Shown in pieces: positions 10,812-23,546 of a stretch of 64,000 nt of DNA; position 1 is the stretch's first letter; every line of letters starts with the position of its first letter. The DNA is from Chlorokybus atmophyticus (taxonomy: Eukaryota; Plantae; Mesostigma and Chlorokybus algae). Where the stretch lies: assembly GCA_009103225.1 (NCBI GenBank), contig RHPI01000772.1:561312-625311 (forward strand), in the 5' to 3' direction. The position numbers and the translations under genes were made by a program. The notes beneath the pieces are model-generated. The model searched no databases. It had not been told where the DNA came from and worked only from the letters and a program-made list of their open reading frames with translations.

Positions 10812-12071
10812 GATGTGTGAAGGCCTGCTACTCCTGCTTTGGCCAACAACAGACTTGCGGGGCAGAGCGGCGAAGACGACGACTAGGCCACGCTCAAGGG
10901 CACGGACACCGCTAGCAACAACAATGCAAACGCCGCCGCTGAGAGAAACGGCAAACACAAATGCGCGACAATGATGCCAGCCGCAACCCTTACTGCAGCT
11001 GCCGCAGCACAGCAAACCTGTAGTTTCGCTACTAAGTAAGCGAAAGCAATCTTGCATGCCAATGGCGAATTCAAGCCGTTTGTGTCAACTAGCAGGATCT
11101 CGCTAATTGGCTAGCTGATCTAAGATTCTTTGGGCGCACAAGCTGACGTCAGCAACGCGTCAGGTCTGCGCCCGAAGCATCTGTCCGTTGTGTGTGTACG
11201 CCAGTTGTACACCCGTCGTTGGATGCTGATAGGGCGCGCGAGCGGCCGTGGGATAAGGTTCCGCCTGCCCGCACGTTAGCTGGCGCGCGGCGTCGCGTCA
11301 GCACGTCAAGATGACGGGATCTCATTATGGGGCTGTTCAACTTGAAGGCCCTTTTGGTTTGGGGGCTCGCCAACGGATAGAAAGAATCTGCGTATAGGAA
11401 ACTGGTGCGTTGCACTCGACCACCCGGTTGTAAGTGTGAGGCCCGGCATTGAGTTCAAGCTTAGCGGTGTTTGGAATATAGGGCTGTTATTAAACCTGGG
11501 TTTGGGCACTTACGAACATAGAACATCACCAAGAACATTAATGTTCTTCATGCGTCCCACTAACAGTATAAAGTTCACATTCAATGTCCTAGTTCCGAAT
11601 TGCATCATAATACGAACAGACTCGCAAGTAACAAACGTTTTCATAATTCCGAGATCTCAAGTACATAATATCTTATATCTTGATATAATTGTAAATAGCA
11701 TAAAATGCGGAAATTGTAATATACATATTTACACACGAACACGCTTTATTCCTTATAATGCAGAACATTACACAAGAACATTGCTGATATCTTATGGTAC
11801 ATCAGCAATTAATAATGATGCACAGTATATCTCTAATCTCATATACATGTACCACATACGTGCTGCTATGTGCTTGTTTGTTTTTAATTGCAAATCTTGA
11901 ACAAAACAATAACCTTTTACGACAAAGTTTGTTCAGTAATGGCCGTTCAGCAAGCAAAAACAAACGTTCTTTGTTTACGGTATATTCACGAACATAATTG
12001 TTCAAACCTAGCCCTATTTTTGTGCTGTACATGGCTATATGACACTGCTTGTATCATCTATACATCCCCCC

Positions 12072-12117
12072 CTTCCACGCTGTGGGGAGAGTAAGGGTAG
12101 GTGCAGGCTTCAAGCAC
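12072..12117 (+). repeat. Exact 46-bp copy of 857-902, preceded by a C run and ending at the N gap (12118-12145); probable assembly artefact
   Basis: CTTCCACGCTGTGGGGAGAGTAAGGGTAGGTGCAGGCTTCAAGCAC occurs at both positions, offset 11215. Confidence 0.85.
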
Positions 12118-13703
12118 NNNNNNNNNNNNNNNNNNNNNNNNNNNNAGCGGCGACGTCTCCAGCGCCCGCCAGCGCTGACCCCCCCATCTTGCCACCATTC
12201 AATGTGTTTAGGCCCTAATTAAATCTCCCGTTTTTTAAGATCCACGGAGGCGTCGAGAGTTTTAATAAGAATTTGTTCAACTAGCAAACAACGGAGCTTG
12301 CAAATTGGTAAAGTCCAACCGCCCTGTATGCACACTCCATCTATGCACATCCACAATGTATGCACATTTTGTACGGGAACACATGCCCTAGTCAAGTTAC
12401 CATACGTAAACACTTGCACGCTCAATCCAAATAAACCCTATAGACCATTTATGCATACATAACTAGAGGACGGACTAAATTCATCTTACATAGAATGTAT
12501 GTTATAAATATTGCACTCACTGTTGGATTTTAATAAGTACAAGACATATGTGCTCGATCAATAACATATAATTGATATCCCGTATTGCAATACATACATT
12601 GTGCACGCTGAGAGGTTTATGCGCGGTATGCACAATATGCCTGGTTGAAAGGAAGCACACCATTCCTAAGCTCCAATTGTGTGCTTTGAATGAGGACGAT
12701 AACGAACGAATTTGCATTTGCATTATTGTAAATGGACCCTCAGCGGTAGGGAACATGTGAACGTTCCCTTATTGGCCCGATGCTATTGACAAACGGCGAC
12801 CTGCTGCAGTTTGCAACTACTGCATCCATAAAACACGAGCCTCGCATTGCCTCATGCAGTACATATATGCCATGGCAGCAATGTCAAACGAGCGAAGCTC
12901 AAAGCAAATCCATGGCATTACATGATGTGTGTTACGAACCATTTTATAATGTGAGACACTATATATTATATGTACTGTATTGTTATAGGAAAGTAGCTTG
13001 TATGATCTACATGTACATTGACATCAGCTAATTTTTCAATAGGTACATCGATCATATATAATGAATGCATCATGACAATTGTCGACATGTGAGGTACGTA
13101 CAGAGTAACCATACCTTACATGGACGTCTCATGTTAGTCATTGCTTTTGACATTATTGCCGGCTTTACTAAATGTTCATATCACATACGACTTGCAAAAC
13201 AACAGCTTCCTGCTTATCATGTTATGAAAGCGAAGCGGCCATTACGCTGCAATGCACACGGTTGGGTGACAACGGAAATGCTGAAATGCTTGATGATTAT
13301 GCTTGTTTGTCGACTCATTTGCACCGCAAATGTTTTTGGATTGAGATATAAAAACACATCACAATAAGATGCAAAGTAACATGGCTTGGTATTGGTATAG
13401 TCACCTATTGACAGTCCATGAATGCACCACCATCACATGCACGTCTGATGCACATGAGGCACATGTACAAGGTAATAGTCACCTACTGGCAGTCCATTCC
13501 ACGCATTCGCCACATTATCTCAAGCACCAGAAAGTGTCAGTGCGAATGCGTTGCAACTCTTGAAGTATTTCTTAAGAGCTGTACAAGATGTAGCTACGTA
13601 CTCGAAGCATGCTGCAATTGTTATTGAGGAGCACATCGTGCAAATATCATGGCATAGCAGCATGTGTTGGTGCGCCAATGCTTTAACTACCAATCTCACA
13701 TGC

Positions 13704-16700
13704 CTAGCTTTGCTTCCAACTACTTGATGAGGTAGACACAATAACCTCCACCTGCAGGTATGCGCATTGCTGGTAAGCATAATGTTGATGACAAACAAGA
13801 CAAAGAGGATGTCAACTCACCTTCTGATTGAGCGGATCATCTTTTGGCAAAAGGGGCTCGATTGTAGACAGCACATCGCGCATAAGAGGTCGTTGCTCCT
13901 TGGTTCGAGATGCGCACCTCAAGGCTACCTCTATAATGCTGCGCGCCTGAAAGCAAATGCCCACAACCAACCATCAGTGAGCCATGCCCAACATGGACAA
14001 TCTGTAAGGCACGAACTCCTGCACGCGGCTTGTACTTCTTGGCCCATACCTGCTCCAGGTTGAGCATTGGCAGTGTTGCATCCAGAACAGTTTCGACCTG
14101 GTTCGCATCATATTTACGTTGCACCTGCCAGGCAACAGAGAACCGTGTCATGAGAAGCCAACATTGCACACAAGCCACTGCCTGTATGCACGGAAATTTT
14201 ACATACCCACAGCATGGTCCACTGTTCGCCTGAGGGCCTGCTCATGTCCAAGGGAGTGCGACCAGTCACGAGCTCCAGGAGCACAATGCCGTAAGCGTAC
14301 ACATCACATGAGTAGTCGACACGACCAAGCTCAGCATACTCTGGGCTCGTGTAACCTGCAGTACCCACCACACGCGTGGTGTGGCTCACGCGGTGTTCAT
14401 TCAAGCACTTAGCCAAGCCGAAGTCGCTGATCTGTACAAGAATACATTGTTGGTTACTCTCATGTAGCAACTCAATCACCAGACACATGGTTTGCAGATA
14501 AACGAAGCAACAAGGAGTAAACCTTGGGGACAAGCGACTCGTCTAGTCTGCACACAAGCAATGCATTAGAGCACATTACAGTAGGACCACACAGCACAAC
14601 CTTCTGGTAAGGGGGCAACACGCTTACAAAATGTTTGCCGGCTTGAAGTCGCGATGCACAATGTGTGCTACATCGTGCAGATACTGCAACCCTCTCGCCA
14701 TGCCAACCGCAATCCGTAACCGTTGCGTCCAGTCCAAAGGTTGCACTGCACAAGTTACACAGTAAGAGACGAGCGGGGTAGGTAACTATGTCATGCGCAT
14801 ATTGCGATGCACAAAAGCAGCCTACTGGGATCATGCATGCTGACCTGCACGGTGCAGCCGGTTTGCCAGATTGCCACCCGCCAAGAGCTCAAGCACTAGC
14901 AGCACATTCTCGTGCTCGGTGCAGTAGCCATGCATGCGCACCAAATTGGGGTGTTGCACACGCATCAATGCCTCCACTTCAGCCAGAAACTCAATTTCAC
15001 CCTGTCACAAACCAGGTGATGTTGTTTGCACCCCACAAATAGAACCAACAATGGACTGATACCAACACAGCCATGCTTACCTGCTGACCGCCCAACTCCA
15101 GGCGCTTGACCGCAAGGCGGGTGCCATTGGCAAAGTTGGCGATGTACACACCTCCAAAGCCGCCCCATCCCTATGAAACACATGATAGAGTGTGACGCAT
15201 GTCACTGCCAGAGGCAGACATTGCACTAAAGATGGCGATGATGATCTAATCAGCATGTATACAAGTGCTTGCAACAAGTGGATGCTACTTACCAAGATGT
15301 TGTCGGCGCTGAAACGTCCGGTAGCTGCATGCAAGTCGCTGTACTTGAAGATCATGGTGCTGCCATCGTTGACAATCCCTGCCTCAAAATCGTGACCGCC
15401 GACAGCTGTCAACAGACGCAGGCAGTAAGACTAGCAGAAACATGTTGTGCAACAAGCATTCAGGACAACCGGCACAGGTGACTTACGCGCAGTAGGAGAA
15501 AGTGGTGCTTTAGCTTCATAGTAGTCGGCATCCTTGCCACCGGCATTCTGTTTTCTCTTGCGCCACCATACAAAGAGCAGCACCGCAGCGATGAGCACCA
15601 CTGCTACTCCTGCATAGCCAACGATATGTTTGGTCGTTTGAAGGTTGACAGCTGCTCAGACCTTACCCACTAACCAACGTGCTTCTTGACGCACGTTGTG
15701 CTACAGATGCACCAGTGCTTACCTGCAATAGCACCAATAATCGCGCCGACAGAGCTGCCTCCACCACCATTGCTGCCGGGTGGTGAGGGTGTTGACGGGG
15801 AGGACGGCCCAACCACAGCATAGATAGCCGCTGCTGTTGGCCCGCCGCACTGCATGCATAAGCCCAGATAGTGTTAGTGCTTAAAAACTGCCGCTGGTAG
15901 GGCTGAAGGGTTACTGACAAAGAGGCTGACCTTCTGTGTAGCATCTCCAGCACAATTGGCGGAGCACAAGTCATCCGGTGATGCCTTTGAGCACTGGAAG
16001 GCTCCGCATATACACTGGTTACCGTTTTGCACAGCAAACTGCGAGGATCCCTGGCAAAGCTGATTGCAACTGTGGTGGGGATTGACATCAACAATTAGCT
16101 ATCAACGTGTGTTCCATGCCTTCATGCAAGCACCATGTCAAAGCCATACCATAAGCCACCCACCTGTCCAGAGTCAAGTCGGCTACATTATCATGAGTTG
16201 TGGTCGCTTGGGTGGTGCCCAGATCGGATGAGAAGGACGAGTTACTGAAGCAGCAGCCCCTAAATTGAGTTTGATAGTCTGGACAGGACAGCGACCATCA
16301 GCATGAGCATAGCAGTCTTGATAGAGCCTTGCACCCGTCACGCCAACACAGATAGGAGGGAAGACACGACGATGAATGATACAGAGCACAACATGTCATC
16401 CTCACCGTTCTCGATGTCCAACTGGCAGAGAGTAGCACCGATGCCGCGCTGATCACTCTGCTGACAATTCCAGTCGATGAATTGACCAGCTTGCACCGTG
16501 GTGACCAAGTTTCCGTATGCATCGGTGATGTTGAGTGGGCTGTCACCGCGCAGCGCCACGCAGTTGGAAGCCCCGCCTGATGGTTCTGTCGCTGCCCAGT
16601 TGGTGTACGCCACCGGAAGATCAGGATCAGCCTCCCAGACATATGTTCCAGGCTGCCCAAAAACGTCTATAAGTGTATAATCGCCCAGGCAACATGCGTG

Positions 16701-19483
16701 TATATATAACCGCGTGCACGCACGAGAATATCATGCACACGTGTGTAGATGAGCGTGTGACCTGAGTGCCTGGCAGTGCAGTGCATAGTGCGACCAACTA
16801 TGCACCTTGTCTCGGTCGTTGAGTCCAATCCACGACATCGTTACAGTACTAGTTTCGTTTGCAGCCTCATCAGCGGCTTGAGAGTTGACTGTAGCAAGCT
16901 TTGCCTGGTACCCGTCGCACAAAAGTCTTCCATCATCGATTGTGTTGGCTGCAACGTGCACAACACATAAGCTACAACCGACTGGTACAAGCCTTCTTTA
17001 ATTTGAACAGCAGTATCACTGAATGACTCTTGCATTGGTCCGCTGGCAGCGAACACTCACCAGTTAGCTTCCCATACTGGTAGCAGCCGCGGGTGATGTT
17101 GCCAGCAATGGGCACAGACCCTTTAGGGCAGCCGTTGCTGCTGGGAAGGAACTCGCAGAGGTATGAAGGCGACGCCGGGAACTCGCAGTACAGATCTCTC
17201 CAGCTGGCCTCTGCTCGGTCAGTTACGATCATGGCAGCACAGTGTTGGTTCCTTAAATACGGTTCACCATTAGCCACATTCCATGCGAAGTAGTCGATGG
17301 GTGTGCCATCTTGCCAGAAGAAGGCATTGTTGACCTCATCGTAATTATAACCAAACCAAAGGTTGGCGCTATTGGTCTTGCCAATTAACCACACCTGCGA
17401 CAACATACACGCAGCCCAGGACAGCTTTTCGGCACATGTCCAGTGCAATGCCTGTGTGTGCGCGCGTGCATGCATGCGTATATGTGTGTGAACGTGCAAT
17501 GAGCTTCATGCATACTTGCAAAACAATGCAACGCACCTGCTGATTCTCTAACTCGTTGCGAATGGACGCCAGAGTGCCACCGGCAGCTGCGCAGGCAGCA
17601 CTGGCTGCACCCTGGTTGAAGAAGGAGATGTAGGTGAAGCATCGGCCACTACGACTCGAGTCGCGGAACAACCCCTGACATGAGCCTGTACAGATATGAC
17701 TGGTTGTAAAACATGCTGGACAGACCAACTGAACAGCATAACCAATGAAGCCATGCGTTGCTTGCTGCCATGTGCTTTATATATAGATAACTCGGCAGCT
17801 GTGTCGGTTTTACTACAGAGTAAACGACTGTGCTTACATGCGCTGCCAAGACTGGTTCCAGTTGTCGTCACAGACGAGACATACACGTCTCCACAAAGCC
17901 CTTCATTTCCGGCAAAGGCGCTGCAGGTATCATAACGTTGATGGAAGGGTGCAGTTTGACACCGCATAAGCAGCACAACAACAAACTCTAAAGCTACCTT
18001 GCAAGTTTAGGCACTTCCTGAACTGAGCGTGGTAGCGGGCCAAGGAAGTAGTTATTGGACAGATCTCTGTAGACGCAACATCAAGCGGTCACTTTATCGA
18101 AGCAGGTCAAGAACATATACTACAAGTCTGCCACTACACAGTTAGCATGCTCACACAGAATTGAGCTGGGTCAACTGTGAAAGCCCCTCCGGAACCAACC
18201 CTGTGAGGGTGTTCTGCTGCAAGAGCCTGCGTGAACAGTCTGTCAATGTAAAGCCCAAGCATGACGGTTTGCAAAGCGGTTAGCAGTAGCTGTGGACGCA
18301 CAGCTCTGATAGGCTTGTCGCAGCGGGAATGCCCGCAGATATAGCGCCTCGAAAGTCATTGTTGTTCAGCCGTCTGTTGCAGTCTAGGTGAGACTGTGTT
18401 CATCCACAACACCAAGCGTCAACAAAAAGGCACAGTCTTACAGCTGTGTGAGTGCTGATCCCAGAGTGGTAGTCGGCAGCGTGCCACTGAGCTTGTTATT
18501 ACTCAAATCCCTGCAAGACAACCAGTGCCTTACATGCTGTCTACAGATCGGCACATACACGTAGCTATCACACTGCAGCGTACAGAAGTTGAAGCCTAGG
18601 CAGACTCCAGATGGCATCATGAAGATAACCTGTAAGCCTGTTTTGCGACAGGTTGCTGGCAAACCACACACGGAAAAATCAGTAAGCCCTATCAACAACA
18701 TGCAACATTGTTTTATAATACAAGTTTAGCGCAATGCTTACAGCGTGGTGAGACTAGTCAGCTGGGCTAGCGACGACGGTACCCCGGAGTAAAAGGAGTT
18801 TTGACTGAGATCACTGCACACAAACACAGGGTATTGTCACTAACACTGTCATGAGAGTCAAATGCATGCTTCACTACTGCTGCATGCTACCGTACAGTAT
18901 CTGGAGGCTTGACAGTTGGCCAATTTCAGGGCGAATGATCCCGCGAAGCGCAAGGTTGTTCAAATTCCTGAAAACGGAGGTTGTGACTTACTACATAAAG
19001 TGCAGAGTTATATGAAGCATGCACAACAGCCAGCATGTTGATATTCCTTACAACTGCGTGATTTGGCTATTTGCGCACGTCACGTGAGCCCATGACCCAT
19101 CACACGGGTTGCTGGAAGTCCAACTGCTGAGCGCACCAGTGGGATCAGATACAATAAACGACTTGAACAACAGGAGAGCAGCACCTGCAAGGAAACAACA
19201 AAAAGGGTCAACTCTGTCAGACCAGACAACGAGCTCCCAATGCATGCACATGACCATTACTCACCAGCATTGGCTTGTGCTGTCGACAAAGAAGACGCCA
19301 ACAACACACAAAGCTGGAATCAGTGAAAGCAATGGAAACTCGTCCGGTTTTCATGCAAGGGCATGTACTTAGCAAGCACAGGAATCGGTTAGGAATGGAT
19401 TAGCCAAAGAGCTAACCTGAAGTATGAGCAGCTGTGTAGAGAATCGCCAATGTACACAAAAGAAGCGCAGTCAGCTTCCCCAT
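13704..19483 (-). CDS. Receptor-like kinase (RLK/Pelle): signal peptide, LRRNT, 6 LRRs, LRRCT, 2 C-type lectin domains, WSC domain, Pro/Ser linker, TM, RD Ser/Thr kinase
   Basis: Signal [22 protein letters not shown]; LRRNT ([18 protein letters not shown]); six ~72-nt LRR exons (e.g. [21 protein letters not shown]); GNEGLCG; CTLD1 (LWFGY..FFWQDG..YFAW..GEP..HCAAM..WRD.YC); CTLD2 ([23 protein letters not shown]); WSC ([43 protein letters not shown]); [26 protein letters not shown]; kinase [54 protein letters not shown]. Confidence 0.93.
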
Positions 19484-21302
19484 CTAGAGGGATGAACCTG
19501 TTACGGCTGCTTTCACAACTCTTAATCTACTACCACATCACCTGTTGCAAGCAAGCTTTACTTGACATAGGCACGATAAGTAAAGCTTTCTTTGTATGGC
19601 GTTCCTGGCTACACAGTGTGGTTAACTTCTCCAAGACGATTCTTGCGCACAGGCCCTTGACATGACTTAAGGTTGAGTGAAGTATAGTTGTCCTGTCCAG
19701 TATCTACAACAAGAGCGAGGAATTCGTGCTCAGCCAAACTGTAAATGCCCATTAAACAGCTTGGTGAACCCAGCATTGTGCCTACATGCATAATTAACTG
19801 ACGAACACACAGGTCTGCTGGAACCGGAAGCAAGAAAGCATTGATGAATGCATGGACCATTGAACAATACGTCAAGCAAGCAAACCAACAATGCCCTGTC
19901 GGTTGCGATTGGGTAAGGACTCTCACTACGACCGCACATACCAGCCATGCAACACCATTGCACGGAGAGAAGGAAAAAGCCCAGCACACAAAGCTTGATT
20001 TAGGTTGCTTTTCAACTCTAAGCCCCCAAAGCTGCGTATGACAGATGGCAAGGTGGCTTCCAGATTTGCTCTAACTTCACCAGCTTGATGTTACAGTCCC
20101 ATAAGCTGCATAGCAGTTGCAACCAGTACACCAGAGAACCGTAAGAGTGGCGCCCCTGACAAGCTGAGTGACAAAGTGCAAAGGTCACGCATGCAGCTTA
20201 GACTGCATTGCATTTACAGCCACGAAGCAACTTGCAATCGACGCAGGCTTTGCACATCTTCTGAACAACAGGCGTCAATGTTCGGAGAGACAGCAGCAGG
20301 GGCAGCAGTGCCAGCTGACTCAGCACGCACATGTGCTAGTACCCTTCTTCGTACATAATTCCAGCACTAGAATTCTACTGCCGCAACACTAACGTACCTC
20401 TCCTTACCGGCGCACATGAACCTCTCACATACCAGCCCCGCCGCGGCAAACCCCGCTGCCGCCGCCACCACCACCACCACCACCACGTCCACCGCCGCCC
20501 AGTGCACGCCCTCATACACTGCGTGCGATATTGCGCGGTAAAACAAAACAGCGGGTGCCCCGCCGCGGAGGGACGGCGCCTGCCCACAGCGCGCGTCCAC
20601 CGCGAAACATGGCTCGTCGCGTCGCGACGCACTCGACTGCTGGGGACGCGGCCTGAGTTGATCAGATGTTGCGAAATAACAGGAAAGCGAGTTAAAAGCC
20701 TCCTCTTCGAGAGCTCAACAAGCACACCAGTCATGTGACAATTTGCGCGCCAAGGCAGCACGCGCCAGAGCAGGGGTGTGGGCAGTATCGTGCTACCGTA
20801 CTGTAACCGGTAGGCCTTGCCCTAGGCCCGTGCAGCACACCAATGCAGTACTATGGACTGCGAGGAAGTGTCAACGCATCATCAAGCATTGCACACGTAT
20901 TACCTTAAGGTGGACATTTGGCAGACCTGTGCATGCACATAGAGTAGATCAGCAGCAGCCATCTACAACAGCAAGCAATACCTAGGTAGGCTGGCCCGGG
21001 CACTTTGACAACCAACATAACACAACATAACACAAGTGAGCTTGTTTGCTGATAGCAAACACAGTGGCTTGGCATCAGCACAAGCTGCAGCTTATCTACA
21101 AATTCAATCATCAACTATAGAAGTGAGTATGTTATGGTATTGAATTAATGTTTTGTGCCGCATGCGCAAATTAACATCACATGCGCAATAAGGTGTTAAG
21201 TATGAAGGTATAACTTTTTGAATAGAAGTTAAACATACCAATAAAGCAAGAACATCAAAAGCTTGACTAAGACACGTTGCACTGTAATCTGATGCTGAAT
21301 AA

Positions 21303-21350
21303 TTATATATATATATAGTTATATATATATATACATATATGTATATTTAT
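21303..21350. repeat. Imperfect (TA)n tract in an AT-rich intergenic spacer
   Basis: Seen directly. Confidence 0.85.
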
Positions 21351-23546
21351 ATTAGAGGGAGTTCCCAGTTATCCTTGCATCAAATGCAATATAACAGACG
21401 ATAGTATAAAATAGTTATCATGCATGAAAATTTTTATATAGTACTAATTGCAATCTGCATTACACAATAAATTTGTAGCTGCTCTGTTTATAAATGCTCA
21501 TTAGAGTTCATCCAGTACCAATATGAGTGCACCATGACTCGTCGGATATGTCAATATTTGAGAAATTTCTGCAATTGTCGCAAGTGCACCAAATAACAAG
21601 TCCCGTATGAACGTAACTACATCCTGTTTTAGTCGTTTTATTCATGATGATGTATATATACAGAATTCTAACAATAATTATCAATTTCATGTTAAAAGCT
21701 ATTTGTCATCAATTGTGTTGCTTGAGGTGTCACGCGAAGTGATGGCAGTAAAGTTTATCCCATAATTATTCTATCTTCTTATAATTTATATACGCATAAG
21801 TCATATAACATGCCCTTTGCATATTTGAATCATGCCACTTCTGCATCATCTCGTAACATTGATGTAGTTTAATGACATTTGTGCATTATAATGCGATGCA
21901 CACGGCCTGTAATTGCAACAATCGTTATCGCGTGCGACAACTCTTGTACAACACGCGCAATAGTAATGATGTATAACACGCTTGCAATTGTGCTGTATCG
22001 CAACATAATAGCTAAAATACCAAGCATGTAACAATGTCCCGCACTATTGTTATGCAAAAAGTAAATGGAGGGGCCCGTATGCATTACATTAACAATGATT
22101 ACATTCTGTACAAGGGCGCTACCTATCAGTAAACACGGCACGTAACAGGTGCGTCGTAAAGTGCCATTATAGTTAAATGGGATTAAAGTTATGACAAGGT
22201 TGAAGTTAACAGTGGCACCGGTATAGACATGTGCCCACAATACACCTCAACCATGAATGGGGTTTGGTATGTAACGGAAAAAGTATAATATATTCATAGA
22301 CACACGTGTTGTACAAAAGCTTCGTTTTTAAGGCTTCCTGCAAACCATTCGAATTAATGGTTGCTGAACTTATTAAGAAGCATAGGAGGGCACCGCACCC
22401 AGAAATGTATGCAGGCTGTTGATATGGTAATCTTGCAAATCATACGCTTGCAGCTACAGTGACGTTGGGTGTGACGTGTGCGGTGTGTGCCATGGATACA
22501 TTAAATGTGCATTGCATGCAATAATTACTGGGAGCATGCAATAAACATGGCATGAGCATAGCATCATATATGAGCGTTTTGAATCAACTAGTCGACACCA
22601 CTATATCACTATTTTGCATAGATCATATCACTCCGTTCGTCGTGCAAATTAGTATATGCGATTTCACCTGCCCACACGGGCTACTGTCTGTCATTGGGTG
22701 TGAGAGGTGTGACGTGTGTGTGGCGTGTGGATTGTGTATTGCAATAGAGTGCAAAGGAGTATGCTGTGCCAGCAAATCACACACACGGCAATGTATTAGC
22801 CTCATGGATCTGGGGGGTGGATAAAAGTCATAATAAGGATTTGTGTGCAAAAGATGCAGAGGGCACTAAAGGCACAAAACGCGTTAATGTGCACGCTTGC
22901 AAGCACACAGGCAGCAAACCAAACAAGGCACAACACAAGCTGATAATGATTAAGAGCACAATTATCAATAGCAACGGGCTGGTCCAGGCCCCTAAAAACT
23001 GCAACTTGCCAACAACACCAACTATGTGTACAAAAGGTTTATGCCTCATGTGTGTCACCGCGAGATAGAGCAGCGTGTGTATAGTTACCATATATGCAGC
23101 CGCAGCGCATCCTTTCTTACACCCATGGATGCAGAGCATGCTGGACCCGCTAAAGCACTTGAAACCCTCAACCAATGCCGCAGATGAATTGCAAGTCAAC
23201 GGGTCTGAGATGGATGGCGTGATTTGAAACACTTGCTTGACGCACAACTCTTATCTGGCAGCGAAACACATGCATGTGGTTGGAGCTACAGCTGATGTTC
23301 TCACATGAGGGCGCGCTGATGGCAACAGCTCCTGAGGCTTGCCAAAGACAATTGAGAACTGTATATGCACCACAACCCGCTGGTTCTCAAAGTGCTCAAC
23401 TCGTTGCACATTACCCACAAGCGCGGCCAAGCTGCTGGCCTTTTCTTACTTTGCAGCTCATGCTCCATTCTGCAAAAATAAGCGCACTCATGCGCTAGAA
23501 AAATGATGCAGCGAGGCTGCATTTGCCTATCACTACTGCCCTTAAC

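What the first reader, a model, noticed from the sequence alone, without database searches (positions are those of the whole stretch)
13704..19483. Receptor kinase with a four-part ectodomain: LRR, two C-type lectins and WSC
Seen: one frame-consistent spliced ORF with signal peptide, LRRNT, 6 LRRs, two CTLDs, a WSC domain with its full Cys pattern, a TM helix and an intact-looking RD kinase. Knowledge: land-plant RLK classes usually carry LRRs or a lectin (the C-type LecRK has a single CTLD and no LRR). WSC domains are carbohydrate-binding modules of fungal wall-stress sensors, and LRRs typically mediate peptide or co-receptor binding. I know of no named class with this combination. The CTLD sugar motifs are non-canonical (EPY/WRD and EPS/FID instead of EPN/WND). 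Inference: an algal glycan or cell-wall surveillance, or microbial-pattern, receptor that integrates carbohydrate and protein ligands, and a possible record of early RLK ectodomain shuffling. This is the best candidate for an undescribed system in the window.
Basis: partly seen in the sequence, partly recalled or inferred. Interest (0 to 1): 0.85.

Follow-up and report, generated by a model that had tools for sequence, protein, structure and literature searches.

The report
Algal LRR–lectin–WSC receptor kinase gene
This is a real, expressed gene of the early-branching green alga Chlorokybus for a cell-surface receptor kinase whose outer part joins leucine-rich repeats, two C-type lectin-like domains and a WSC domain; the gene is already in the public annotation, I found the mix only in it and one paralog, and its ligand is unknown.

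Summary
A 28-exon gene on the minus strand has its CDS at 19483 to 13704 and encodes 1049 aa. All 27 introns are GT..AG. Spliced contigs of 3321 and 3333 nt from two separate studies cover the gene without a mismatch.

My model is identical to the public model jgi/Chlat1/6757 (Chrsp50S06449) of Chlorokybus atmophyticus. Pfam on the whole protein finds LRRNT_2, LRRs, two Lectin_C domains, WSC (just above its cut-off) and Pkinase. There are seven LRRs, not six. A signal peptide, one TM helix and all catalytic kinase motifs are present.

One diverged paralog, Chlat1/903 (40% identity), has the same domains in the same order. No other protein in three large searches combined CTLD, WSC and kinase. 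The Chlorokybus kinases form their own clade within plant RLK/Pelle kinases.

Both CTLDs lack the Ca2+/sugar ligands (EPY/WRD and EPS/FID against EPN/WND), so lectin activity is doubtful. The order WSC, Ser/Pro/Gly stalk, TM recalls yeast Wsc wall sensors. Animal polycystin-1 also combines LRR, WSC and CTLD.

Function is untested. A review cites a published count of 11 RLKs for this alga. This scan already noted the same architecture on another piece of this genome (s1-194284).

Verdict: real, a new variant of a known kind, of moderate interest.

The parts
13604..19483 (-). Whole gene as supported by transcripts: 28 exons, CDS 19483..13704 (stop codon 13706-13704), 3' UTR to about 13604 (X1) or about 13547 (X2)
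   Evidence: Identical to P0001 = jgi/Chlat1/6757.
19417..19483 (-). Exon 1: start codon and signal peptide ([22 protein letters not shown])
   Evidence: In-frame TAG directly upstream of the ATG.
19265..19279 (-). Exon 2: 15-nt micro-exon (residues AQANA) between two phase-1 introns
   Evidence: 10 letters lie between the joint 19189/19417, and the X3 piece 19105-19189 has 1 other letter. This fits a canonical AG|15 nt|GT exon.
19052..19184 (-). Exon 3: LRRNT_2 cap (residues 28-72)
   Evidence: Pfam LRRNT_2: 45 bits on the exon alone and 40.8 bits in the whole protein.
17998..18967 (-). Exons 4-10: seven plant-type LRRs, one per 69-72-nt exon, all introns phase 2
   Evidence: Strong matches to plant LRR-RLK ectodomains in the PDB.
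17838..17920 (-). Exon 11: LRR C-terminal cap motif (FAGNEGLCG) and linker
17061..17685 (-). Exons 12-13: CTLD1 (residues about 266-400) plus linker; module bounded by phase-1 introns; motifs EPY and WRD
   Evidence: Pfam Lectin_C. AlphaFold pLDDT mostly 85-92 in the model blocks for this domain, with dips to 62-82. Foldseek to single CTLDs: TM 0.67-0.77 normalised to the target. Motifs.
16406..16948 (-). Exons 14-15: CTLD2 (residues about 419-553); module bounded by phase-1 introns; motifs EPS and FID; about 20-residue loop insert
15931..16278 (-). Exons 16-17: WSC domain (residues about 557-641; last Cys 642 lies in exon 18)
   Evidence: Pfam WSC 31.3 bits against a cut-off of 27.8. Weak PDB matches to a 661-aa chain (9n3u; molecule not named), the 118-aa chain 7pz2 and Kremen. 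AlphaFold confidence here is low, pLDDT 40-74.
15487..15849 (-). Exons 18-19: end of WSC, Ser/Pro/Gly-rich stalk, TM helix (about residues 677-698), basic stop-transfer and juxtamembrane segment
13821..15405 (-). Exons 20-27: RLK/Pelle-type RD kinase domain (residues about 759-1020)
   Evidence: Pfam Pkinase 158 bits. PDB: RIPK and BAK1 about 207-209 bits, IRAK4 145 bits. Tree.
13604..13751 (-). Exon 28: C-terminal tail (15 residues), stop codon 13706-13704, 3' UTR

Best explanation
Shown: this is an intact, transcribed gene of Chlorokybus atmophyticus for a type-I single-pass receptor kinase. From the N-terminus it has a signal peptide, an LRRNT cap, seven plant-type LRRs with a C-terminal cap, two C-type lectin-like domains, a membrane-proximal WSC domain, a Ser/Pro/Gly-rich stalk, one TM helix, and an RD kinase of the plant RLK/Pelle (IRAK-like) family with all catalytic motifs. 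It belongs to a small Chlorokybus-specific family with at least one paralog of the same architecture.

Inferred mechanism: an extracellular ligand or a mechanical change in the wall or mucilage matrix is registered by the ectodomain. The WSC domain is the most plausible polysaccharide-binding part, and the stalk transmits force as in yeast Wsc sensors. The CTLDs have lost the Ca2+/sugar site and more likely act as protein-binding or non-canonical binding or spacer modules. The short LRR block could recruit a partner receptor or a peptide. The signal would then pass through activation-loop phosphorylation of the RD kinase.

My odds: real single-gene receptor kinase about 0.95. Sensing of the alga's own wall or matrix as the main role about 0.35-0.4.
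For: - Gene and transcript: spliced contigs from two studies span the whole CDS with 0 mismatches, and all 27 introns are canonical.
- The model is identical to the public model P0001.
- Domains: whole-protein Pfam hits all exceed their cut-offs.
- The CTLD folds are predicted with high confidence and match solved CTLDs.
- The kinase is closest to plant RLKs and less close to IRAK4.
- TM helix and signal peptide.
- The paralog P0294 keeps the same domain order and nearly all domain cysteines at 40% identity overall and 56% in the kinase. This argues that the combination is maintained.
- WSC domains bind beta-glucans (PMC7816849).
- Yeast Wsc sensors have the order WSC, O-glycosylated Ser/Thr stalk, TM (PMC10139151). 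Here the same order is seen at residues 557-698.
Against: - No ligand, localisation or kinase activity has been measured.
- The WSC score is only just above the Pfam cut-off in this copy (31.3 against 27.8) and its AlphaFold model is poor.
- The CTLDs lack EPN/QPD and WND ligands, so the 'lectin' part of a glycan-sensing story is weak.
- The stalk is short (about 30 residues) compared with what I recall of yeast Wsc1 (own knowledge, not tested).
- Nothing distinguishes self-wall sensing from sensing of foreign glycans or of cell-cell contact.
Confidence: 0.6

Rival explanations
1. It is a microbial-pattern (immune-type) receptor. WSC and/or the CTLDs would recognise foreign glycans such as fungal or oomycete beta-1,3-glucan, and the short LRR block would recruit a co-receptor, as in land-plant PRR complexes.
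For: WSC3 of Serendipita binds long beta-1,3-glucans (PMC7816849). The family is lineage-specific and duplicated, and the paralogs have diverged strongly in the ectodomain: about 31% identity there against 56% in the kinase. Recognition receptors often show this pattern.
Against: There are only two members, so there is no expansion typical of PRR families. No SERK-clade relationship was found. There are no expression data under microbial challenge. The CTLD sugar sites are degenerate.
Confidence: 0.2
2. It is a cell-cell or cell-matrix adhesion and developmental receptor in which the CTLDs and LRRs bind proteins rather than sugars. It would function in the sarcinoid cell packets of Chlorokybus.
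For: Both CTLDs lack the canonical Ca2+/carbohydrate ligands in both paralogs. Many CTLDs are protein binders (general knowledge). In polycystin-1 the LRR, CTL and WSC domains are discussed as adhesion or ECM-binding and Wnt-binding modules (PMC9672506).
Against: No partner is known. The presence of WSC still points to polysaccharide.
Confidence: 0.15
3. In evolutionary terms it is simply the Chlorokybus co-ortholog of the land-plant C-type lectin RLK (At1g52310 class) that secondarily gained LRRs, a second CTLD and WSC.
For: By language-model features, the ESM-Atlas neighbours nearest to residues 266-1049 are the C-type lectin RLK clusters, score 0.96. A review states that kinase-associated C-Lec traces back to the earliest streptophytes.
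Against: That atlas score mostly reflects shared domain content. No Lectin_C-bearing land-plant RLK appeared among the 120 best hits of a CTLD+WSC+kinase query whose length window (431-1372 aa) includes them. In my tree the Chlorokybus kinases form their own clade. C-LEC kinases could not be sampled, so this remains untested.
Confidence: 0.15
4. It is a gene-model or assembly artefact that fuses two neighbouring genes.
For: None found. Short-read contigs are assemblies, not single molecules.
Against: The same full-length spliced contig occurs in two studies. The frame is continuous across 27 canonical introns. An independent paralog has the same architecture.
Confidence: 0.02

Closest known systems
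Chlorokybus paralog jgi/Chlat1/903 (Chrsp107S01328; P0294)
   Same: Same order of LRRNT, LRRs, two CTLDs, WSC, TM and RLK/Pelle kinase. Nearly all the cysteines of the CTLDs and WSC are conserved. The two kinases are sisters with 100/98 support.
   Different: 40% identity overall. It has one extra LRR, a longer insert before CTLD1 and a more canonical WSC (59.9 bits). Its degenerate CTLD motifs differ: QPS/FDD and EPW/FVD.
Land-plant LRR-RLKs (e.g. SERK/BAK1, LRR-II)
   Same: LRRNT_2 plus plant-type 24-residue LRRs, a short LRR block, one LRR per exon, TM, and an RLK/Pelle RD kinase. BAK1 kinase is among the best PDB matches at 207 bits.
   Different: Land-plant LRR-RLKs have no CTLD or WSC between the LRRs and the membrane. 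The kinase does not group with the SERK/NIK clade.
Land-plant C-type lectin receptor kinase (At1g52310 class)
   Same: CTLD plus TM plus RLK/Pelle kinase. Nearest ESM-Atlas clusters by features.
   Different: Kinase orthology was not tested.
Fungal Wsc1-3 cell-wall-integrity sensors
   Same: An extracellular Cys-rich WSC domain followed by a Ser/Thr(Pro)-rich stalk and a single TM helix (PMC10139151; residues 557-698 here).
   Different: Fungal sensors have a short non-catalytic tail that signals via Rom2/Rho1. Here the tail is a protein kinase, and LRRs and CTLDs precede the WSC.
Animal polycystin-1 (PKD1) extracellular region
   Same: It is the one named protein I know that combines LRR, WSC and C-type lectin domains in one ectodomain (PMC9672506).
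   Different: Different domain order. It also has PKD repeats, REJ, GAIN/GPS, 11 TM segments and no kinase. No specific sequence relationship was tested. The combination most likely arose independently.
Mannose-receptor family (MRC1, PLA2R, DEC-205, Endo180)
   Same: Tandem CTLDs. They are the best sequence and structure matches for residues 266-556, at about 25-30% identity.
   Different: They are animal endocytic receptors with 8-10 CTLDs plus CysR and FNII domains, and no kinase, LRR or WSC. The similarity is at the generic CTLD level.

Membership tests
RLK/Pelle (IRAK-like) protein kinases | Kinase domain more similar to plant RLKs than to other kinase groups | tested here: met
   PDB: RIPK and BAK1 207-209 bits, then PBL2, SymRK, Pto and BRI1, against IRAK4 at 145 bits. 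The best database hits are all plant RLKs at about 40-45% identity.
RLK/Pelle (IRAK-like) protein kinases | Intact catalytic motifs (Gly loop, VAIK Lys, alpha-C Glu, HRD, DFG, APE-like) | tested here: met
   [33 protein letters not shown] and TSPEY read in P0001. Pkinase 158 bits over model positions 4-259 of 263.
Receptor configuration (type-I membrane RLK) | Signal peptide, ectodomain, a single TM helix, cytoplasmic kinase | tested here: met
   Hydropathy shows one strong helix at about residues 677-698 followed by WWRKRK, and a hydrophobic N-terminus. No dedicated SP/TM predictor was available.
Plant LRR-RLK | LRRNT_2 cap plus plant-specific LRRs | tested here: met
   Pfam LRRNT_2, LRR_8, LRR_1 and LRR_4. 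E-values of 1e-98 to 1e-30 against plant LRR-RLK ectodomains.
LRR-RLK subfamily II (SERK/NIK) | Kinase domain inside the SERK/NIK clade | tested here: not met
   The SERK/NIK clade is 100/100 and excludes P0001. P0001 groups with the other Chlorokybus kinases at 100/97 (36 rows, midpoint root, no outgroup).
C-type lectin-like domain (Pfam Lectin_C) | CTLD fold with the conserved cysteines and WIGL core | tested here: met
   Lectin_C 83 bits in 2 stretches. AlphaFold pLDDT mostly 85-96 across the two domains, with a few lower blocks. Foldseek to single CTLDs gives TM 0.67-0.77 and rmsd 2.3-3.2 A.
Ca2+-dependent carbohydrate-recognition CTLDs | EPN or QPD motif, the Glu before the Cys, and the WND motif | tested here: not met
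   CTLD1 has EPY, QHC and WRD. CTLD2 has EPS, SNC and FID. The consensus of 26 other tandem CTLDs is GEPN, E(D)C and WND. The paralog is also degenerate.
WSC domain (PF01822) | Score above the Pfam gathering cut-off with the conserved Cys pattern | tested here: met
   31.3 bits against 27.8 over model positions 8-82 of 82. The paralog scores 59.9 bits. The cysteines at 596, 600, 614, 616, 630, 634 and 642 are conserved between the paralogs. The fold model is of low confidence.
Fungal Wsc-type wall-integrity sensors | WSC, Ser/Thr-rich stalk, TM, and a short cytoplasmic tail that signals through Rom2/Rho1 | tested here: not met
   The extracellular order is the same, but the cytoplasmic part is a 350-residue kinase region. 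It works like a Wsc sensor at most; it is not a member.
Land-plant C-LEC RLK (At1g52310 class) | Kinase orthology with that class | not tested
   No C-LEC sequence could be obtained. The only evidence is a feature-based lead and their absence from the top 120 hits.
Polycystin-1 | PKD repeats, REJ, GAIN/GPS and an 11-TM channel-like region | tested here: not met
   None of these appear in the Pfam scan of P0001. Only the LRR+WSC+CTLD co-occurrence is shared.

The most novel reading that the evidence does not exclude
Chlorokybus independently built a wall-integrity or matrix mechanosensor. It would have done so by inserting, through phase-1 exon shuffling, two CTLD modules and a fungal-style WSC+stalk 'anchor' between the LRR block and the membrane of an early plant LRR receptor kinase. 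If so, this would be a hybrid of the fungal Wsc sensing principle with plant RLK/Pelle signalling. It would also be a convergent counterpart of the LRR-WSC-CTLD ectodomain of animal polycystin-1.
Probability: 0.25. Interest if true: 0.6.

Novelty: new variant of a known kind. Interest (0 to 1): 0.4.

Why it matters
Chlorokybus, together with Mesostigma, is the earliest-branching streptophyte lineage. Its handful of receptor kinases therefore shows what the plant RLK toolkit looked like before its large expansion.

A receptor with plant LRRs, CTLDs and a membrane-proximal WSC domain on one RLK/Pelle kinase shows that ectodomain modules were being recombined very early. The clean phase-1 module boundaries fit exon shuffling. 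The protein is also a concrete candidate for how an early streptophyte monitors its wall or mucilage.

The finding does not open a new class of system. It is a lineage-specific member of the receptor-kinase family, already present in public annotation, and its ligand and role are unknown.

Tried and rejected
1. A whole-protein Pfam scan could not be run from the window directly because the gene is spliced. I scanned exon pieces first. I then recovered the full protein as P0001 with an exon-13 search of the 1.84-billion-protein representative library.

2. I searched for the same ectodomain elsewhere. Region 266-650 gave only generic multi-CTLD animal proteins. Region 735-1035 gave only ordinary plant RLKs. 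Part 266-1049 gave one paralog and nothing else with Lectin_C or WSC. All three searches have length windows and word filters, so absence is not proof.

3. P0076 and P0137 are long proteins that hit exon 13. I checked them as possible polycystin-like proteins. They are AIR9/fn3 proteins and not relevant.

4. The look-up of encoding contigs for the paralog found nothing on record. Intron positions of the two paralogs could therefore not be compared.

5. I first read an apparent T/A mismatch or non-canonical splice at the 15-nt micro-exon. I resolved it as an aligner effect: the last 5 nt of the micro-exon were laid on the intron end with one mismatch (X3 piece, 1 other letter).

6. The ESM-Atlas search of WSC+TM+kinase found no large WSC-kinase cluster.

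7. Gong & Han 2021 (Plant J) is not held in the library. I could not check whether that paper shows this exact architecture. Full-text searches for WSC together with RLK and algae found no description.

8. Horizontal transfer of the CTLD/WSC part was considered and not pursued. Identities of about 25-30% to animal CTLDs are at the generic domain level, and the modules sit in a typical intron-rich algal gene.

Full report
**1. What is in the sequence**

The region 13.3-19.8 kb has many short open segments on the minus strand. They read in order as signal peptide, LRRNT, LRRs, two CTLD-like stretches, a Cys-rich WSC-like stretch, a hydrophobic helix and kinase subdomains.

I searched public runs with the 5961-base stretch 13600-19560. 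Five runs held it or part of it. Laying four of them gave these results:
- One spliced contig per run in X1 (3321 nt, study P1) and X2 (3333 nt, study P2).
- Both contigs have 0 other letters.
- The table reports 26 joints in all, 15 of them listed, whose ends read CT..AC on the plus strand. That is GT..AG for a minus-strand gene.
- X3 (study P1) holds two shorter spliced contigs over the LRR exons.
- X5 (study P3) holds only unspliced pieces, which is genomic DNA.

The runs are labelled 'RNA?' as a guess. The removal of canonical introns shows that these contigs derive from RNA.

I used the listed joints, the record coordinates of the pieces, and canonical splice sites near them. This gave a 28-exon model that is in frame throughout. 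The CDS runs from 19483 to 13704 and is 3150 nt, encoding 1049 aa. The introns are 68-153 nt long. An in-frame TAG lies immediately upstream of the ATG.

One apparent oddity was ten extra letters at the joint 19189/19417. It resolves into a canonical 15-nt micro-exon at 19279-19265. The aligner laid its last five bases on the intron end with one mismatch. The X3 piece 19105-19189 shows this as '1 other letter'. That accounts for 27 introns against 26 reported joints.

**2. Identity**

A search of the representative library with exon 13 returned P0001. It is 1049 aa long, and exon 13 lies at residues 316-426. P0001 is identical to my model.

P0001 is EukProt EP00898 Chlorokybus atmophyticus P006395, which is jgi/Chlat1/6757/Chrsp50S06449. 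It is a singleton at 90% identity. The gene is therefore already in the public annotation of this early-diverging streptophyte alga.

**3. Domains**

Exon pieces alone already hit LRRNT_2, Lectin_C (both CTLDs), WSC and the kinase families. On the whole protein:

| Pfam family | Bits | Note |
|---|---|---|
| Pkinase | 158 | |
| Lectin_C | 83 | two stretches |
| LRR_8 | 52.9 | |
| LRRNT_2 | 40.8 | |
| WSC | 31.3 | cut-off 27.8 |

- Hydropathy gives one strong helix at about residues 677-698, followed by WWRKRK, and a hydrophobic N-terminus.
- The kinase has GWGGFGG, the AVK lysine, [11 protein letters not shown] and SPE. It is an RD kinase with nothing missing.
- There are seven LRRs (exons 4-10), not six.
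- An AlphaFold model of residues 262-655, built on a 28-row alignment, gives both CTLDs mostly high confidence (pLDDT mostly 85-96, with a few lower blocks). The WSC part is of low confidence (pLDDT 40-74).
- Foldseek matches single solved CTLDs (mannose receptor CRD4, CD23) at target-normalised TM 0.67-0.77 and rmsd 2.3-3.2 A.
- By sequence the WSC part weakly matches the PDB chains 9n3u (661 aa, molecule not named), 7pz2 (118 aa) and Kremen.

**4. Are the CTLDs lectins?**

I aligned P0001 against 26 tandem-CTLD segments whose consensus is GEPN ... E(D)C ... WND.
- CTLD1 reads GEPY ... QHC ... WRD.
- CTLD2 reads TEPS ... SNC ... FID, with a loop insert of about 20 residues.
- The paralog reads QPS/FDD and EPW/FVD.

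It means that several of the five Ca2+/sugar ligands are gone in all four domains. Canonical Ca2+-dependent sugar binding is therefore not supported. This leaves WSC as the only module with a reasonable expectation of polysaccharide binding. WSC3 of Serendipita binds long beta-1,3-glucan (PMC7816849).

**5. Relatives**

I ran three searches of the 5.8-billion-protein collection.
- Residues 266-650 found only generic multi-CTLD animal proteins of the mannose-receptor family, at about 25-30% identity.
- The kinase region found thousands of plant RLKs at no more than 45% identity. None carried Lectin_C or WSC.
- The part 266-1049 found one protein with the same content. This is P0294 = jgi/Chlat1/903/Chrsp107S01328, 1165 aa, scoring 476 bits.

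Pfam on P0294 shows LRRNT_2, LRRs, two Lectin_C stretches, WSC at 59.9 bits and Pkinase. The pairwise alignment is collinear over the whole length at 40% identity. Nearly all the CTLD and WSC cysteines are conserved. The kinase domains are 56% identical.

A maximum-likelihood tree of 36 kinase domains places P0001 and P0294 together (100/98). They sit inside a Chlorokybus-only clade (100/97) with the two kinase domains of P0297. That clade lies outside the sampled SERK/NIK, PSKR/PSY1R, PERK, ALE2/RLCK-VII, CRK, L-LecRK, LRR-VIII-2 and CrRLK1L clades. The tree has a midpoint root and no outgroup.

I could not bring a land-plant C-LEC RLK sequence into the session, so that relationship is untested. 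The ESM-Atlas feature search names C-LEC RLK clusters as nearest, but this largely reflects shared domain content. No large WSC-kinase cluster turned up.

The kinase's best solved relatives are RIPK and BAK1 (207-209 bits), against 145 bits for IRAK4. The LRR block matches plant LRR-RLK ectodomains very strongly.

**6. Gene structure as a record of assembly**

Each LRR is a separate 69-72-nt exon flanked by phase-2 introns. Three modules each begin and end at a phase-1 intron:
- CTLD1, exons 12-13, 483 nt.
- CTLD2, exons 14-15, 390 nt.
- WSC plus stalk, exons 16-18, 381 nt.

The micro-exon is also flanked by phase-1 introns.

Symmetric phase-1 modules are the classical signature of exon shuffling of extracellular domains (general knowledge). 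The internal introns of the two CTLDs are at different positions, so the pair is not a recent simple tandem copy.

**7. How it most likely works**

Shown: a type-I membrane protein with a composite ectodomain and a catalytically complete RD RLK/Pelle kinase. It is expressed, and its architecture is conserved in a diverged paralog.

Inferred: ligand- or force-induced activation of the kinase. The membrane-proximal order is WSC, then a Ser/Pro/Gly-rich stalk (residues about 650-676), then TM. This is the extracellular plan of yeast Wsc wall-integrity sensors (PMC10139151). My preferred reading is therefore a sensor of the alga's own wall or mucilage, at about 0.35-0.4.

The alternatives are a receptor for foreign glycans (about 0.2) and an adhesion or developmental receptor with protein-binding CTLDs and LRRs (about 0.15). 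None of these can be separated with sequence alone.

**8. Comparison with what is known, and novelty**

- Receptor kinases with LRRs, and receptor kinases with one CTLD, are established classes.
[quoted passage not shown] That paper itself is not held.
- I found no paper that describes a WSC-bearing RLK or this four-part ectodomain.
- The co-occurrence of LRR, WSC and CTLD has a named precedent in animal polycystin-1 (PMC9672506). That protein is otherwise unrelated in architecture.
- This scan has already noted the same architecture on another piece of this genome, presumably the paralog, and its follow-up reached the same conclusion (s1-194284).

I therefore class it as a new variant of a known kind: real and well supported, lineage-specific, already annotated, and of unknown function.

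**9. Limits**

- The transcript contigs are short-read assemblies, not single molecules.
- The protein searches have length windows and word filters.
- Absence from Mesostigma and other algae is not demonstrated.
- No signal-peptide or TM predictor was available.
- The WSC fold model is weak.

Noticed in passing
window 19265-19279 (-): A 15-nt micro-exon coding AQANA directly after the signal peptide, flanked by phase-1 introns of 137 and 80 nt. It is present in the spliced contigs of X1, X2 and X3.
   Followed up: yes
window 15723-18967 (-): Regular module structure. Seven LRRs each sit in their own 69-72-nt exon with phase-2 introns. CTLD1, CTLD2 and WSC+stalk are each bounded by phase-1 introns. 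The internal introns of the two CTLDs are at different positions.
   Followed up: partly
P0297 (jgi/Chlat1/5761/Chrsp387S05503), not in this window: An 804-aa Chlorokybus protein with two tandem kinase domains and no ectodomain found by Pfam. Both of its kinase domains fall in the same Chlorokybus-specific kinase clade as this receptor.
   Followed up: partly
window 11500-13500 and 21000-22500: The gene is flanked by AT-rich stretches (GC 0.32-0.43, against about 0.5 in the gene) without long ORFs. They are presumably intergenic.
   Followed up: no
window 17440-17500 and 16700-16790 (-), introns 12 and 14: Introns contain CA/TG- and CACG-rich low-complexity runs (for example CACACACATATACGCATGCATGCACGCGCGCACACACAGG).
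   Followed up: no
run X5 (organism B, study P3) on window 14892-19560: Unspliced low-depth contigs, all in the 99%-or-more likeness class with no other letters listed, come from a run labelled as a different organism code than X1-X4. This could be the same strain under another name or a very close relative.
   Followed up: no
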